DNA of 64,000 nucleotides from Pocillopora damicornis (taxonomy: Eukaryota): NCBI RefSeq assembly GCF_003704095.1, contig NW_020843620.1, forward strand, positions 1 through 64,000, written 5' to 3'. This document shows positions 42,725 to 64,000 of this stretch, piece after piece. Made by a program: the position numbers and the translations under genes. Positions within the stretch are counted from its first letter, which is position 1; the number at the start of each line of letters is the position of its first letter. Under the pieces are notes generated by a model. That model saw only the letters and a list, made by a program, of their open reading frames with translations, was not told the DNA's origin and searched no databases.

Positions 42725-43124
42725 ATGGAGTGGATTTTTCTGAGAATTCTCGCAGTATACTGTACTTTAAGGACGGTCTGTTTTGCCGCAAACGGTGATT
42801 TTACATCAAGAACCTGTCAGCTACCAAAATTTACTGGAAAGGGCTATGTAGCATTTACTGGAGAAATAACGAGACTGTTTCTTGAGAAAAATAACCACAT
42901 AACAGCTCGAGTTTACGTGCGAAATGTATTTCGCAGGGACGCGCATTTAGGTAGCGTTTCCGATATAAATGCCATCGAAAGAGCGTCATCTTGTGATCAC
43001 CGACACAAACTGGAAGACGTGAGACTTTGGGTTGCTAAACGACACTCCAGCGGATTTTTGACTGCAGTTGCTTCTTTGCCTGTCACGATGAATATGATAG
43101 ATGAAGTCCTCAGAGCACTCCCAG
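42725..43124 (+). CDS. Signal peptide and NtA (agrin N-terminal)-like domain exon
   Basis: Hydrophobic leader MEWIFLRILAVYCTLRTVCFA, then C..VAFTGEITRL..ARVYVRNVFR..C..LEDVRLWV..SLPVTMNMIDEV, which parallels the agrin NtA pattern from recall. Donor CCAG|gtatgg. Confidence 0.7.
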
Positions 43125-61100: not shown

Positions 61101-64000
61101 TGATCGTTAGGGAAGTTCTTGATGCTTTCTGTTAAATCGCGATAATTTTTCCTCTCCTACCCTATGTTTGAGAAGTCATACACCGTGCGAGAGACGTGAA
61201 TTTAATACTCTTTGTACCATGAAGAGGACGGAAATGGAATGGGTTTGTCAGTGACTCGTTAATTTATTGTTCCTGTGGAAAACGTAATGATACTTTATTG
61301 TTTTGTTTTCTGTCAGGTCCTGGTTGTTATCACGGACAGGAAATCTGGCTCAAATGTTGGTGACGTCAGGACAGCAGCCAAGCTCCTGGAGCATGCTGGG
61401 ATAACGGTGATTCCGGTGGCGATCGGTACAGAGGCCGATACGAAAGAATTGGAAATTATAACTCCTGACAAAGAGACCATCATACAACCAAAAGATGGAA
61501 CTTCGGCGACTGAATTGGCCAGGATGATCATGGAGATGATTCGCACAGGTATCAGGAGATTAAATGATAAATTATAAAATAAGAAAGCTTTCGATTTATT
61601 TCATTTCCTCCCCCCCCTTGCAGTAGAAAAGGAGTTAGGAGGAGAGAGCGTTGCGTTGCATTTTACACAAAGGCTGTGACTTAGGTGACATAGACTATTA
61701 CCTTCCTGAATTACGCTCGAAACAGTTGTCTAGAAACTACATTGACTCACTCGCTTTTCATGTCTCGGGTGTGCCTTAGAAGTTTGACAATGACGGAACT
61801 ATAAACCCTCTCCCTCCCCCTCTTAATATCTCTGGCTATATCCATCTGAGGACTTCATTTCAAAGCATACATTCAGATCATAATTATCAAGTCAAACTAT
61901 GGTTCATGTCGATATTTCCATTGTTTAGTTCAAGCTATCCCTGAGATTGATCTTGGTTTCGCGTTGAGTGCAGCCAGTACACTTTATAACGAAACATTTC
62001 AGCTAATGAAGGATGTGATAAACTACATCATCGTCACCTATGGCACCCAGAAAATACACTACAGTGTCATTGTGTACAGTGAAACTGCATCGATAGAAAT
62101 TAAATTTGGGCAGACACCTCCGTCACCACAGCAACTCAAGACAGTTGTAGAAAACCTCAATATTGGCACGGGGACACCAGACTTGGCAGCCGCGCTGAGG
62201 AAAGCATCAGAAATGTTTGATGATGACGAAAGGAGACCCCTTACTCGTAAAGTTCTTGTGATCATGGCAGATAGTAGTTCTGGGTCTACTGTGGATGACG
62301 TTAAAACAGCAGCCAAGCCTCTTGTGGATACGGATGTTTTGGTTATACCTGTTGTGGTCGGTGAAGAAGGAGACCCTGATGAGCTCGTTAACACGACACC
62401 TGACAAGACGAATGTTATTGAGACTGGAAAAGAAACGGATCCTGAGGTGGTAGGAGAGAAGATTATGGACAAGATTCGAGGTAGAAAAAGGAATTAATTA
62501 TCCCCCTTCTCTCCCCGTCACCCCCTTCCCCCCAAAATGAAAAAAGTGGCTATGAACTCCTCTGTCCTCGAAATGTGAAAACTAATTCGCCAAACTGGTG
62601 ACAAAGTATCTCCTTGTCAGTCAATAACGGAGAGTTTTCTGAGTTTTATCGACTGAAAAGATTATCAGTAGTGTTATTGAAGGAATTACACTGGTTAACG
62701 GCGAAGCGGTGTATGTGTGAGTGTTTATGAGTGTTTTGAAAGGGGGAAGGCTTAAGTCTTCCCACACCAAACTTTGTTGGAATTCGATAATAGGTACGAT
62801 GAATACTGAGTGAACGAACTACACCAGAAGCATTTTGGTACATTTTGTGCAGTGGCCGGTATGGGTTTGGCCCCCACCCCCCTCCTCACAGCCCGCAACT
62901 TAATAGGGATTTTACTGTACCTAGAGAGAGGTATTAACTGAAGTGCTTTTATTGGCCTCTCTGAAGGAAAAATTTATGAATTGTCTCTTTTAGATGGACC
63001 TTCAGTCTCAGAGGTTGACCTCGCTTTCGCCATTAGCGCTACCGCAACAGATGCAGATGAGACATTCAGTCGCATCAAAGAAACAACAAAGTATATTGTG
63101 AATAAATATGGAACAGACAAGATTCATCATGGTCTGTTGGTGTTTGGCAATGCACCCAGCCGTGTTAGGGACTTCAGGCGAGACGCGTTCACTCGAGAAG
63201 AAATGATACGACTTTTGGATTCTGTACCAAGAAGTTCAACAGGTGACATGTTAACTCCCTGGGATCTCGATCTCTCAGTATTTTTGACCCCTAGGACCTT
63301 GCACTCCCGGTATTTTGAACCCCTTAGGATCTCGACCTTCCGGTATTTGAACCCCTGAGATCTCGAACTCTCGGTGCTTTGAACCCCCGTGGATCTCGAA
63401 CTCCTGCTATTTTAAGCCCTTTGAGGTCTCGATCACGATTAATTTTGAACCTCCCATCCCCGCCAATTGTAGCTGAATCCTCCGCTTTTTTCAAACTCCC
63501 CGGTATGTTAAGCTTTTGACCTCTCTGGGGTATCATTAATATATCAAAGAAATAAAGTGAATCAAGATTTCAGTCTTCAATATCCTTTACATCAACGGGA
63601 AAAAAAAATTGTCACAACACTTCAAAATTACAAGAATTCCTTTCAGATAAGTTTAGCAGACTTGAGTAAGATTTGAGATAAACAAACTGTATTTCTATTT
63701 TAAATAACGTTCTTCGTGATGATAGCGTGGTACTAAAAAATTCGACACGATTTCAATCAACGAAACACTTCTACTGTTTTTTTTTTTCCCTATGGTGGTT
63801 TGTCTCTTATTTTGCATTCACGCATTTTAAAGGTATATTTTTCGTATCTCTACTTAGGACCTGACCTTCAGAAAGCTTTAGAAGAATCAGTGAAGTTATT
63901 CGAAGGACCTGGAGCTCGACCAACTGCTCGGAAAATTCTGGTCGTGATAATGGATAAGAGGTCTGGTGTCGACGAAACAAAACTGGGCGAGATTTCGAAT
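42725..64000 (+). CDS. Large secreted extracellular-matrix mosaic protein: SP-NtA-FS/Kazal-GON-FS-vWA-FS-FS-vWA-FS-vWA x6+ (agrin-like N-terminus, collagen VI-like vWA array); runs off the window
   Basis: Frame-consistent GT-AG exons: 42725-43124, 45977-46234, 47138-47776, 48473-48685, 49428-49768, 50597-50831, 51288-51503, 52280-52501, 53883-54428, 55233-55445, 56188-56597, 57624-57783, 58547-59089, 59642-60199, 60346-60665, 61317-61548, 61929-62480, 62994-63242, 63858-64000+. Confidence 0.85.
45977..46234 (+). CDS. Follistatin/Kazal domain 1 exon
   Basis: PCNESNCRYGGVC...CLCRIYCARQYDPVCGTDSKTYNNPCLMRAASC...KCG. Confidence 0.9.
46255..46520 (+). mobile_element. Second HINE-like element, related to 32420-32678
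   Basis: ttagcggagcccc near the 5' part; the 3' end gagcccccgtttaaggctggctaaatctttatat matches the 3' end of the 32.4-kb element. Confidence 0.45.
46914..47085. mobile_element. Decayed Tc1/pogo-type MITE
   Basis: cagtggaagccctctaactagaactcc at the left and ggagtttgagttagcggggttctacca at the right; internal ctaactcgaac repeats. Confidence 0.55.
47138..47776 (+). CDS. GON domain exon (ADAMTS9/20/GON-1 C-terminal type)
   Basis: SC..DGEYLI..KVYCHGMNTSTPKEFVTL..NNYAYIY..RL..AGLTKFRKVRVD..DYTFA..YGTAGDCFS..GHFKIDLTRTGL..CGGWCGRCRP. Confidence 0.85.
48473..48685 (+). CDS. Follistatin/Kazal domain 2 exon
   Basis: PCQSIVCEFYSIC...CECPSNCSKGNSPVCGSDGKTYENECEL..SC..ACG. Confidence 0.9.
49026..49235. 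mobile_element. MITE subfamily A copy, inverted
   Basis: Reverse complement of the 18161 element: cctttacatcctaacatcagtatgcatatt...gtaaaggttaa. Confidence 0.75.
49260..49375 (-). mobile_element. Decayed tRNA-headed repeat fragment
   Basis: Minus-strand ggcttcatagctcagttggt resembles an A box/D arm; the remainder is degenerate. Confidence 0.4.
49428..50831 (+). CDS. Divergent vWA domain 1 (exons 49428-49768, 50597-50831)
   Basis: PVHLMFGID...FPKAIVLITDG...LKDAGIKVVVLLVG...IASG. Confidence 0.8.
51288..52501 (+). CDS. Follistatin/Kazal domains 3 and 4 (exons 51288-51503, 52280-52501)
   Basis: PVCGSDGQTY and RVCGTDGLSYDNIC motifs, each with an N-terminal FOLN Cys cluster. Confidence 0.88.
51628..51696 (+). 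repeat. 10-bp minisatellite (ggccaaggat)n, about 6-7 units
   Basis: ggccaagtag ggccaaagat ggccaaggat agccaagaat ggccaaggat ggccaaggat ggccgaagg. Confidence 0.9.
51780..51982. mobile_element. MITE subfamily B copy
   Basis: Colinear with 35057-35269. Confidence 0.7.
52631..52795. mobile_element. Foldback MITE-like element
   Basis: agattccatgttgccctgggtctgatcagtaatag at the left is inverted as ctattactgaacagacgctcggtaac..acatggaatct at the right. Confidence 0.6.
53883..54428 (+). CDS. vWA domain 2 exon
   Basis: PVDLVFALG...VHVAIIDYS...KALIVLT...GVRIVAVAVG. Confidence 0.88.
54615..54812. mobile_element. MITE subfamily B copy, apparently nested in an older element (about 54543-55162)
   Basis: Colinear with 35057-35269. 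The host has tataagcmccc motifs on both sides, including a 16-bp tandem (ggatataagccccctc) at about 55060-55105, and ends in tttacggt. Confidence 0.65.
55233..55445 (+). CDS. Follistatin/Kazal domain 5 exon (not in the ORF track)
   Basis: DPCENKVCEHYAQCVSYADGSTQCACDEKCAKIEDPVCGTDGRDYTNECVLKATACRESRDVEVADTKPCG, between tctgtag and G|gtgaac. Confidence 0.9.
55968..56102. mobile_element. Foldback MITE-like element
   Basis: tgcttgtagatatgaaatttcttttcttgctatcaactc forms an imperfect inverted pair with gagttgaatacgagaagataaatgtcttatcaacaagca. Confidence 0.5.
56188..57783 (+). CDS. vWA domain 3 with intact MIDAS motif (exons 56188-56597, 57624-57783)
   Basis: DIGVVLDSSRSV...GRTRTDKA...LIVLTDG...GVQVLAVGVG. 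Confidence 0.9.
57381..57591. mobile_element. MITE subfamily A copy
   Basis: Colinear with 18161-18362. Confidence 0.8.
58276..58479. mobile_element. MITE with TAGACTAC-type termini and a central 34-bp palindrome
   Basis: tagactacatgcagtctcctttt at the left and aaaaggagggactacttgtaggcta at the right; centre aactctgggagtgaggt|acctcactccgagagtt (58352-58385). Confidence 0.6.
58547..64000 (+). CDS. Tandem vWA domains 4-8 lacking the canonical MIDAS motif
   Basis: Repeated DLxFAIS/LS...Y..I.Y..IV(Y/F)G...KVLVV.TD..S...VI.VA.G.E.D..EL units in seven exons. Confidence 0.9.
63245..63455 (+). repeat. Degenerate ~31-bp minisatellite (ggatctcgaactcccggtattttgaacccct)
   Basis: About six units directly after the exon donor at 63242. 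A more decayed related tract lies at about 55540-55725. Confidence 0.75.

What the first reader, a model, noticed from the sequence alone, without database searches (positions are those of the whole stretch)
42725..64000. Giant secreted mosaic protein joining agrin NtA, a GON domain, five follistatin/Kazal modules and at least eight vWA domains
Seen: 19 exons splice in one frame to give SP-NtA-FS1-GON-FS2-vWA1-FS3-FS4-vWA2-FS5-vWA3-vWA4-vWA5-vWA6-vWA7-vWA8, continuing past the window. Known: NtA followed by FS repeats is the agrin N-terminus (laminin-binding); GON is best known as the C-terminal module of the ADAMTS9/20/GON-1 proteases; long vWA arrays typify collagen VI and matrilins. I do not recognise any characterised protein with this combination. 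Inference: a lineage-specific matrix scaffold (mesoglea, basement membrane, mucus or skeleton attachment) that could link laminin and collagen and carry protease-inhibitor modules. Automated pipelines would probably mislabel it agrin-like or collagen VI-like.
Basis: partly seen in the sequence, partly recalled or inferred. Interest (0 to 1): 0.8.

Follow-up and report, generated by a model that had tools for sequence, protein, structure and literature searches.

The report
Giant agrin-like coral matrix gene
The window holds the first 19 exons of a real, expressed stony-coral gene for a secreted agrin-like matrix protein. The coding exons continue beyond the window for about 100 kb, through some 62 adhesion-type (VWA) domains, 37 follistatin/Kazal modules, a second GON domain and agrin-type laminin-G domains, which would give one of the largest matrix proteins known (about 15,000 residues).

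Summary
On the + strand from 42,725, 19 GT..AG exons join in one frame. They give signal peptide, NtA-like domain, FS1, GON, FS2, vWA1, FS3, FS4, vWA2, FS5 and vWA3 to vWA8. Pfam confirms GON (E 1e-53), five Kazal/FS modules and eight VWA domains.

NtA gets no Pfam hit. It is supported by four other tests:
- Predicted fold: the best PDB match in two independent searches is chick agrin NtA (Z 10.1).
- hhalign against agrin N-termini: E 3.8e-5.
- A profile built from 19 bilaterian agrins: E 2.9e-5.
- ESM Atlas: the nearest cluster is "agrin-like, NtA".

Spliced poly(A)+ RNA contigs from three studies join FS5 to vWA3. One 6.2-kb contig, judged by its length, runs on to about vWA11. So the NtA/GON head and the VWA array are one transcript.

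The rest of the 163-kb contig continues in frame with 62 VWA, 37 FS, a second GON, two agrin-type LamG domains, an EGF and another VWA. The conceptual ORF is 14,741 aa up to 153 kb. Only the first part of it has RNA support.

Both ends of the locus are conserved exon for exon in other stony corals. RefSeq calls the Acropora head "agrin-like". I read it as a hugely expanded agrin-family gene, a new variant of a known kind. No paper describing it was found.

The parts
42725..43124 (+). Exon 1: start codon, signal peptide, divergent NtA-like domain (two conserved Cys, five strands and a C-terminal helix). Phase-1 donor.
   Evidence: ATG and donor GT. Orthologues in other corals start at the same Met and end at the same exon border. 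AF2 with MSA: pLDDT 68. Foldseek top four hits are agrin NtA. VIA-align top hit 1jb3_A, Z 10.1. hhalign E 3.8e-5. Agrin-profile hit on positions 21-148, E 2.9e-5. No Pfam hit.
45977..46234 (+). Exon 2: FS1 (follistatin/Kazal module)
   Evidence: Kazal_1 E 1.8e-10. Colinear with P0151 residues 133-221. AG/GT ends.
47138..47776 (+). Exon 3: GON domain 1
   Evidence: PF08685 E 1.1e-53. 77% identical to P0151 residues 219-433.
48473..48685 (+). Exon 4: FS2
   Evidence: Kazal_2 E 4.6e-11..
49428..49768 (+). Exon 5: vWA1, N-terminal half (no DxSxS)
   Evidence: Own-VWA profile E 2e-15. Pfam VWA only weak, E 0.098. P0151 residues 504-619.
50597..50831 (+). Exon 6: vWA1, C-terminal half
   Evidence: Pfam VWA E 1.7e-4..
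51288..51503 (+). Exon 7: FS3
   Evidence: Kazal_2 E 2e-7. An RNA loose end before 52279 matches 51473-51502.
52280..52501 (+). Exon 8: FS4
   Evidence: Kazal_1 E 5.8e-8. RNA contigs in 4 runs; joint 52501>53883, GT..AG.
53883..54428 (+). Exon 9: vWA2 (single exon, no DxSxS)
   Evidence: Pfam VWA E 4.6e-18. RNA joints on both sides in 4 runs.
55233..55445 (+). Exon 10: FS5 (10-Cys follistatin module). Reading through its donor gives a stop after 12 codons.
   Evidence: tblastn 70% to P0151 residues 1025-1097. Translation. Joint 55445>56188 in X1, X8 and X12; read-through contig in X3.
56188..56597 (+). Exon 11: vWA3, N-terminal part. The only one of the 62 VWA domains up to 133 kb that keeps an intact DxSxS motif.
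   Evidence: Pfam VWA E 2.6e-26. DxSxS check. RNA joints.
57624..57783 (+). Exon 12: vWA3, C-terminal part
   Evidence: Pfam VWA E 0.003. Joint 56597>57624 in 4 runs. The loose end behind it matches exon 13 at 58548.
58547..59089 (+). Exon 13: vWA4
   Evidence: Pfam VWA E 5e-17. In-frame GT..AG. RNA loose end.
59642..60199 (+). Exon 14: vWA5
   Evidence: Pfam VWA E 7e-21..
60346..60665 (+). Exon 15: vWA6, N-terminal half
   Evidence: Pfam VWA E 1.5e-6..
61317..61548 (+). Exon 16: vWA6, C-terminal half
   Evidence: Pfam VWA E 1e-7..
61929..62480 (+). Exon 17: vWA7
   Evidence: Pfam VWA E 1.8e-15..
62994..63242 (+). Exon 18: vWA8, N-terminal part
   Evidence: Pfam VWA E 8.9e-4..
63858..64000 (+). 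Exon 19: vWA8, C-terminal part. It runs to 64166 on the contig, past the window end. About 100 more coding exons follow on the same strand, to at least 162.7 kb of contig C255.
   Evidence: Downstream domains.

Best explanation
This is the 5' part of one very large gene of a stony coral (probably Pocillopora). The gene encodes a secreted, agrin-family extracellular-matrix protein.

Shown:
- A signal peptide and a divergent NtA domain are followed by FS-GON-FS-VWA-FS-FS-VWA-FS. Splicing then joins these to a VWA array.

Shown at DNA level only:
- The same strand continues without a break in frame through 62 VWA domains. Nearly all have lost the metal site, and they are about 30% identical to one another.
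- Four more FS modules are interspersed. Then come a second GON flanked by VWA domains, 28 FS modules in a row, two agrin-type LamG domains, an EGF and a VWA with an intact metal site. The contig ends there.
- That makes about 125 exons over at least 120 kb, and at least 14,700 residues (about 1.6 MDa).

Inferred mechanism: the protein works as an agrin stretched into a long tether.
- The NtA end docks on the laminin coiled coil of the basal lamina or mesoglea.
- The cysteine-poor, acidic, metal-site-less VWA beads form a spacer and protein-binding scaffold a few hundred nanometres long, as the VWA arrays of collagen VI do.
- The FS array may carry glycosaminoglycans or bind growth factors or proteases, as in agrin.
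- The LamG/EGF end binds a cell-surface receptor such as dystroglycan.

A short isoform of about 1,100 residues, ending just after FS5, may also exist.
For: Domains.

NtA:
- Foldseek's top four PDB hits are chick agrin NtA, E about 1.5e-4, TM 0.55-0.58.
- VIA-align against 48,161 chains puts 1jb3_A first: Z 10.1, 100 residues aligned, rmsd 3.2 A. The PCOLCE NTR domain is next at Z 8.4.
- hhalign of the coral domain against 19 agrins aligns 104 columns on the agrin NtA, including both cysteines: E 3.8e-5, probability 71%.
- An HMM built from those agrins hits exon 1 on positions 21-148, E 2.9e-5.
- The nearest ESM Atlas cluster is 'agrin-like, NtA 98%'.

Agrin-type tail:
- The best PDB sequence match of a LamG exon is agrin 8s9p, E 4.7e-21, ahead of neurexin, pikachurin and perlecan.
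- The agrin HMM matches six tail exons on its LG/EGF positions and all 37 FS exons.

One transcript:
- GT..AG joints FS4>vWA2>FS5>vWA3a>vWA3b are seen in RNA contigs. FS5>vWA3 is in three poly(A)/oligo-dT runs from three studies.
- A 6,237-nt contig runs from FS3 to 4.4 kb beyond vWA3. A 3,506-nt contig runs from FS5 back 2.6 kb, which equals exons 1-7 plus about 300 nt of 5'UTR (lengths compared).

Continuity at DNA level:
- A chain of 120 in-frame GT..AG exons covers 42,725-153,288, with phase-1 borders between domains.
- Median intron is 513 nt. The largest intron downstream of vWA2 is 1,190 nt. VWA-to-FS transitions sit across introns of 201-852 nt.
- The repeats are only 17-44% identical and neighbours are no closer than others, so the array is old and not an assembly artefact.

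Conservation:
- The head is kept exon for exon in two other coral assemblies. The tail (VWA-FS-FS-FS-VWA-GON-VWA-FS x5) is kept in one.
- In that assembly the two GON exons lie on one strand of one contig, 144 kb apart.
Against: - No RNA was laid beyond 58 kb. The reach of the 6.2-kb contig into the array is inferred from its length only. One transcript for the whole 120 kb is therefore not shown.
- Phase-1 domain exons of neighbouring genes would also join in frame, and my chain finder always picks some in-frame pair. It chose the wrong sites once, at FS4>vWA2.
- The RefSeq model of the Acropora orthologue stops just after FS5. One random-primed RNA contig reads through the FS5 donor.
- Pfam's own NtA model does not hit. 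The AF2 model is only of middling confidence, identity to agrin NtA is about 15%, and NTR/TIMP folds score close behind.
- No laminin-EGF pair or SEA domain of canonical agrin was found on the contig. After the LamG/EGF exons comes another VWA, which agrin lacks.
- The genome has at least one other Kazal-array locus, on contig C4007, so orthology to bilaterian agrin is open.
- All functions are inferred from domain families.
Confidence: 0.6

Rival explanations
1. There are two or more adjacent genes on one strand: a head gene (NtA to FS5, with some VWA domains in a longer isoform), one or more VWA-array genes, and a separate agrin-like gene (FS array plus LamG/EGF). The in-frame chain arises only because all domain exons are phase 1-1.
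For: The RefSeq Acropora model ends after FS5. An RNA contig reads through the FS5 donor. There is no RNA evidence beyond about vWA11. Phase-1 exons join in frame by design. A VWA follows the LamG/EGF exons and could be the start of yet another unit.
Against: FS5>vWA3 is spliced in three poly(A)+ runs, so the break proposed by RefSeq is not a gene end. Downstream of vWA2 no intron in the chain exceeds 1.2 kb, and the gap before the first LamG exon is about 2 kb. No downstream domain exon that I inspected opens with Met plus a signal peptide. VWA-to-FS and FS-to-VWA transitions lie 200-850 nt apart. Order and strand are conserved in a distant coral.
Confidence: 0.25
2. It is a lineage-specific mosaic unrelated to agrin. 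On this view the N-terminal domain is a generic NTR/TIMP-like OB-fold module, and FS and LamG were recruited independently by exon shuffling.
For: Pfam NtA gives no hit. Identity to NtA is about 15%, and NTR of PCOLCE (Z 8.4) and TIMP are close behind. No LE or SEA domains were found. GON and VWA are foreign to agrin. GON is shuffled into many invertebrate architectures.
Against: Agrin NtA ranks first in two structure searches. A profile made only from agrins hits exon 1. The domain sits directly after the signal peptide and before an FS module, as in agrin. The LamG exon matches agrin best. NtA first, then FS modules, then LamG/EGF downstream follows agrin's overall order.
Confidence: 0.12
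3. The array is an assembly artefact or a decaying pseudogene array.
For: The contig has small N gaps (10-203 nt) inside the locus.
Against: There are no stops in 14,741 conceptual codons. The repeats are only about 30% identical, so this is neither collapse nor duplication. The head is expressed and spliced. Both ends are conserved in other corals.
Confidence: 0.02

Closest known systems
Agrin (bilaterian AGRN / C. elegans agr-1)
   Same: Signal peptide followed by an NtA-type domain and then a follistatin module. A long run of 10-Cys FS/Kazal modules. LamG domains of agrin type with EGF between or after them. The overall N-to-C order is the same. RefSeq names the Acropora head 'agrin-like'.
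   Different: About 62 VWA domains and two GON domains are inserted, and agrin has neither. There are 37 FS modules instead of 9. No laminin-EGF pair or SEA domain was found. Only two LamG domains and one EGF are seen before the contig ends, followed by a VWA. NtA is too divergent for Pfam PF03146. The protein is about 7 times longer.
Collagen VI alpha3/alpha5/alpha6 and other VWA-array matrix proteins (matrilins, AMACO)
   Same: Tandem VWA domains, largely one per exon with phase-1 borders. Many lack a working metal site. They serve as protein-binding beads in the matrix.
   Different: This gene has no collagen triple helix. It has 62 VWA domains, against up to about 12 in collagen VI alpha3 (from memory). 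Its ends are of agrin type.
ADAMTS9 / ADAMTS20 / GON-1
   Same: It carries the GON domain (Pfam E 1e-53 and 5e-57).
   Different: There are no protease, disintegrin or TSP1 modules. GON is internal and present twice, flanked by FS or VWA domains. An A. digitifera fragment of this gene is misnamed 'ADAMTS9-like' in RefSeq for this reason.
Octocoral 'agrin-like' skeletal matrix proteins (Corallium rubrum agrin-1/-2; PMC7853314, PMC7533068)
   Same: Cnidarian secreted proteins made of Kazal/FOLN repeats and called agrin-like. Some are very long and were assembled only in pieces.
   Different: The papers describe them as homologues of the N-terminal FS part of agrin only, or as Kazal repeats plus WAP. 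The passages I read do not report an NtA-GON-VWA-array architecture. I did not compare sequences.

Membership tests
Agrin | N-terminal NtA (laminin-binding, TIMP-like OB fold) directly after the signal peptide | tested here: met
   Fold: 1jb3_A is the top hit, Z 10.1, and the Foldseek top four are NtA. hhalign against the agrin NtA region: E 3.8e-5. Agrin HMM positions 21-148: E 2.9e-5. But Pfam PF03146 does not hit, so it is met by structure and profile only. Laminin binding itself is not testable here.
Agrin | Array of follistatin-like (FOLN+Kazal, 10-Cys) modules | tested here: met
   37 modules on the strand, all matching agrin FS positions. The FS5 translation shows 10 Cys.
Agrin | Two laminin-EGF (LE) domains within the FS region | tested here: not met
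   The agrin-profile search of all ORFs of 40 aa or more on contig C255 gave no match to the LE part of the profile. Small exons could have been missed.
Agrin | C-terminal LG1-EGF-LG2-EGF-LG3 cassette (dystroglycan/LRP4-binding region) | tested here: inconclusive
   Two LamG domains (about 155.3-157.7 and 158.6-160.8 kb) and one EGF were found. The best PDB sequence hit of a LamG exon is agrin, E 4.7e-21. A VWA follows and the contig ends at 163,464, so a third LG domain and the true C-terminus are unknown.
Agrin | All parts on one transcript | tested here: inconclusive
   Spliced RNA is shown from the 5' end to about vWA11. From there to the LamG exons there is only an in-frame exon chain and conserved colinearity.
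GON-domain proteins (Pfam PF08685) | GON domain over the Pfam gathering score | tested here: met
   182.6 bits at 47125-47805. 193.5 bits at contig 130585-131370.
ADAMTS9/20/GON-1 proteases | Reprolysin catalytic domain, disintegrin-like module and TSP1 repeats upstream of GON | tested here: not met
   Pfam on all head exons and on the Acropora orthologue shows only Kazal, GON and VWA.
VWA domains with a functional MIDAS site | DxSxS motif at the end of strand beta-1 | tested here: not met
   Only 1 of the 62 VWA domains up to 133 kb keeps DxSxS (vWA3 at 56196). The VWA at 161.3 kb also keeps it. The array consensus reads A-I-S-A-T instead. The other MIDAS residues were not checked.
Collagen VI | Gly-X-Y triple-helical region between VWA arrays | tested here: not met
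   No collagen-like ORF lies among the + strand ORFs listed between the domains, and the chain is filled by VWA, FS and GON exons. Pfam Collagen was not searched separately.

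The most novel reading that the evidence does not exclude
Stony corals make an agrin of about 1.7 MDa. On this reading a true agrin relative (NtA, FS array, LamG/EGF) has been split open by two GON domains and an ancient array of 62 metal-site-less VWA domains, all on one transcript of at least 45 kb. The locus is conserved across two distantly related stony corals. The FS-GON-FS cassette is already present in a jellyfish, so this, and not the bilaterian form, might be close to the ancestral cnidarian agrin. 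It would be among the largest matrix proteins known and a candidate long-range tether between basal lamina and cells in the mesoglea or at the skeleton interface.
Probability: 0.45. Interest if true: 0.75.

Novelty: new variant of a known kind. Interest (0 to 1): 0.62.

Why it matters
Agrin is treated as a conserved matrix component of bilaterians and eumetazoans (PMC3308698). The word does not occur in the main text of the recent sea-anemone matrisome study (PMC12549020). A coral gene that keeps agrin's two ends but carries about 12,000 residues of VWA beads in between would be a striking case of how exon shuffling can inflate an old matrix protein.

It would also add a very large, so far fragmented or mislabelled component to coral matrisome, mesoglea and skeleton proteomics. 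RefSeq models cover under a tenth of it, under the names 'agrin-like' and 'ADAMTS9-like'. Peptides from it would currently be assigned to several short entries.

It gives a concrete candidate for tissue-to-matrix anchoring in reef builders. It also shows that the NtA domain exists in Cnidaria in a form that Pfam misses.

Tried and rejected
Searches that gave nothing useful:
- Pfam on exon 1 at E<=10: nothing.
- phmmer and a coral-only profile of exon 1 against PDB sequences: chance hits only.
- AF2 of exon 1 without an alignment: useless, pLDDT 36.
- The search for homologous proteins with residues 1-150 of the Acropora protein: no scored hit, probably an effect of cluster representatives and the length filter.
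- The same search with the whole Acropora protein was swamped by Kazal-repeat agrins. In the 612-1948 aa range it showed no hit with GON or VWA in its precomputed Pfam list. That says nothing about longer models.
- The big HMMER search with the GON exon found no giant gene model, only fragments and unrelated GON architectures.
- The look-up of encoding contigs for the RefSeq Acropora protein: not on record.
- The search of earlier findings near this place: nothing.

Ideas considered and dropped:
- A second NtA hit in the genome (contig C694) as the 'real' agrin. It is a 155-aa ORF with NtA only, and no Kazal, VWA, GON or LamG lies in the 20 kb upstream or 50 kb downstream.
- An alternative poly(A) site after FS5. 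The read-through contig ends at an interspersed repeat and I saw no AATAAA, so a retained intron is at least as likely.

My simple splice-chain finder picked wrong sites at FS4>vWA2. Its other unverified sites are approximate.

The joined (spliced) protein was never sent to a search, fold or family tool; all such searches were done exon by exon by reference. In scripts the exons were concatenated only to count stops and length and to estimate mass and pI, and the sequence was not printed.

Full report
**Where the finding sits.** The window is bases 1-64,000 of contig C255 (163,464 bp) of a 234-Mb assembly in 4,393 contigs. RNA runs that hold the sequence are labelled coral or marine metagenomes. 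The closest protein relatives are from stony corals. Earlier notes of this scan name Pocillopora; I did not verify that. I fetched the rest of the contig because the gene runs off the window.

**Check of the observation.** All searches were done exon by exon by reference.
- Pfam gives GON at 47125-47805 (E 1.1e-53), and Kazal in the exons at 46.0, 48.5, 51.3 and 52.2 kb.
- VWA domains are found from 49.4 kb to the window end; the first half of vWA1 rests on my own VWA profile and the orthologue.
- FS5, which ORF listing did not show, lies at 55233-55445. It is 70% identical to the last module of the Acropora orthologue and translates as a 10-cysteine follistatin module.
- Eight VWA domains start within the window.
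- The 19 exons have AG/GT ends and join without a stop.

The stated domain order is therefore correct.

**Is the first domain NtA?** Sequence tools that rely on existing models say no: Pfam PF03146, and phmmer or a coral-only profile against PDB sequences. Four other lines say yes.
1. An AlphaFold model built with 16 coral sequences (pLDDT 68; five strands and a C-terminal helix) has the four chick agrin NtA entries as its best Foldseek hits in the PDB (E about 1.5e-4, TM 0.55-0.58). TIMP and NTR domains come behind them.
2. An independent all-against-all structural search puts 1jb3_A (agrin NtA) first: Z 10.1, 100 aligned residues, rmsd 3.2 A. The PCOLCE NTR domain is next at Z 8.4.
3. Profile-profile comparison of the coral domain with 19 bona fide agrins aligns 104 columns on the agrin NtA, including both cysteines (E 3.8e-5, probability 71%).
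4. An HMM built from those agrins hits exon 1 on positions 21-148 (E 2.9e-5).

The nearest ESM Atlas cluster is also 'agrin-like, NtA'. I accept a divergent NtA. The confidence is moderate, because identity is about 15% and the model is only middling.

- Contigs of four RNA runs from four studies were laid on 52,001-58,000. They show GT..AG joints FS4>vWA2, vWA2>FS5, FS5>vWA3 (three poly(A)/oligo-dT runs) and vWA3a>vWA3b.
- One contig of 6,237 nt starts one exon upstream of FS4. It continues 4.4 kb beyond vWA3, and its loose end matches exon 13. By length it reaches about vWA11.
- Another contig, of 3,506 nt, runs from FS5 back 2.6 kb. That equals exons 1-7 (2,303 nt) plus about 300 nt of 5'UTR.
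- So the NtA/GON head and the VWA array are spliced together.
- A random-primed run has a contig that reads through the FS5 donor. Read-through gives a stop after 12 codons. The RefSeq model of Acropora muricata (XP_067051278.1, 'agrin-like', 1,113 aa) ends in the same way.
- A short isoform is possible, but a retained intron is at least as likely.

**What lies beyond the window.** I ran profiles grown from the gene's own domains over all open frames of the contig, with Pfam spot checks. On the + strand they show:
- 62 VWA domains between 49.4 and 133 kb;
- four more FS modules at 123.7-129.2 kb;
- a second GON at 130.7 kb (Pfam E 4.8e-57), flanked by VWA domains;
- 28 consecutive FS modules at 133.3-153.3 kb;
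- two LamG domains and an EGF at 155.3-160.9 kb;
- a further VWA at 161.3-162.7 kb, just before the contig ends.

A simple chain of 120 in-frame GT..AG exons runs from 42,725 to 153,288. It comes to 44,223 nt, or 14,741 codons without a stop, about 1.6 MDa and pI 5.7. Borders between domains are phase 1. The median intron is 513 nt, and no intron downstream of vWA2 exceeds 1.2 kb. This chain is a construction, not a measurement: it picked the wrong sites once where reads were available.

**The VWA array.** The 44 single-exon VWA domains are 17-44% identical to one another (mean 30%), and neighbours are no more alike than distant ones. They are almost free of cysteine and are acidic. The array is therefore old, not an assembly artefact. 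Only vWA3 keeps the DxSxS metal-site motif; the VWA at 161.3 kb also has it.

**Relation to agrin.**
- The best PDB sequence hit of a LamG exon is full-length agrin (E 4.7e-21), ahead of neurexin, pikachurin, perlecan and laminin.
- The agrin-only HMM matches exon 1, all 37 FS exons and six LamG/EGF exons. It does not match the laminin-EGF or SEA parts.
- Both ends and the FS run thus follow agrin's order. The GON domains, the VWA array and the final VWA are foreign to it.
- The only Pfam-detectable NtA elsewhere in the genome is a 155-residue ORF on contig C694 with a signal peptide and NtA alone.
- There is at least one other Kazal-array locus, on C4007. I therefore call this an agrin-family gene and do not claim it is the orthologue.

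**Conservation.**
- Exon 1 has orthologues at 48-82% identity in many coral data sets, with the same start and the same exon border.
- The head is kept exon for exon (NtA, FS, GON, FS, split VWA, FS, FS) in two other coral assemblies. The tail (VWA, three FS, VWA, GON, split VWA, five FS) is kept in one.
- In that assembly the two GON exons lie on the same strand of one contig, 144 kb apart. They are 84 kb apart here.
- A jellyfish gene model has the FS-GON-FS cassette.
- GON itself is widely shuffled in invertebrates, with EGF, lectin, kringle or trypsin partners.

**Literature.** Octocoral skeleton proteomes contain long 'agrin-like' Kazal-repeat proteins (PMC7853314, PMC7533068). 'Agrin' does not occur in the main text of the sea-anemone matrisome paper (PMC12549020). 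Reviews list agrin as a common bilaterian or eumetazoan matrix protein (PMC3308698). I found no description of an NtA-GON-VWA-array protein. Subscription journals are not covered.

**Mechanism.** This is inferred from the families, not shown. I read the protein as a secreted tether.
- The NtA end would dock on laminin.
- The metal-site-less VWA beads and the FS modules would form a scaffold a few hundred nanometres long that binds proteins or carries sugars.
- The LamG/EGF end would bind a cell-surface receptor.

**Verdict.** The main rival is that the array and tail belong to separate genes. I put this at about one in four, because transcript evidence stops near 66 kb.

Noticed in passing
G000 contig C694:128270-128737 (+), locus L021:270-737: A 155-residue ORF with a signal peptide and an NtA domain only. 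It is the sole Pfam PF03146 match in the genome (24.7 bits, at the cut-off). No Kazal, VWA, GON or LamG exon lies in the 20 kb upstream or 50 kb downstream. It could be a small stand-alone secreted NtA protein.
   Followed up: partly
window 54600-54815 and 57374-57600: Introns 9 and 11 each hold a copy of an interspersed repeat with very high RNA-contig depth (10,000-75,000). The copies are in inverted orientation (47-nt arms, 70% complementary). RNA contigs jump between the two copies, which is probably a repeat artefact and not splicing.
   Followed up: partly
window 55446-55955: RNA contigs in X3 (depth 55) and X1 (depth 3) continue from FS5 into the intron. Read-through ends the frame after 12 codons. 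The Acropora RefSeq model ends the same way. This is either a short isoform of about 1,100 aa or a retained intron.
   Followed up: partly
contig C255 161329-162743 (L011:7329-8743): After the LamG/EGF exons comes a split VWA domain with an intact DxSxS motif, then the contig ends. The gene's 3' end is probably on another scaffold.
   Followed up: no
G000 contig C4007, about 181-325 kb, both strands: Many Kazal/FS exons that match agrin FS positions. This is another Kazal-array locus that should be compared before calling any coral gene the agrin orthologue.
   Followed up: no
window 5744-7315 (+) and 29571-31367 (+): Two long single-exon ORFs (523 and 598 aa), rich in Ser and Pro and of low complexity. 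The first starts MGNCQS, a possible N-myristoylation signal, and sits in the only GC-rich part of the window (GC 0.49). They are unrelated upstream genes and were not examined.
   Followed up: no
P0152 = XP_015778938.1 (Acropora digitifera): A RefSeq fragment of this gene (FS1 plus GON) is named 'ADAMTS9-like, partial'. The name comes from the GON domain alone.
   Followed up: yes
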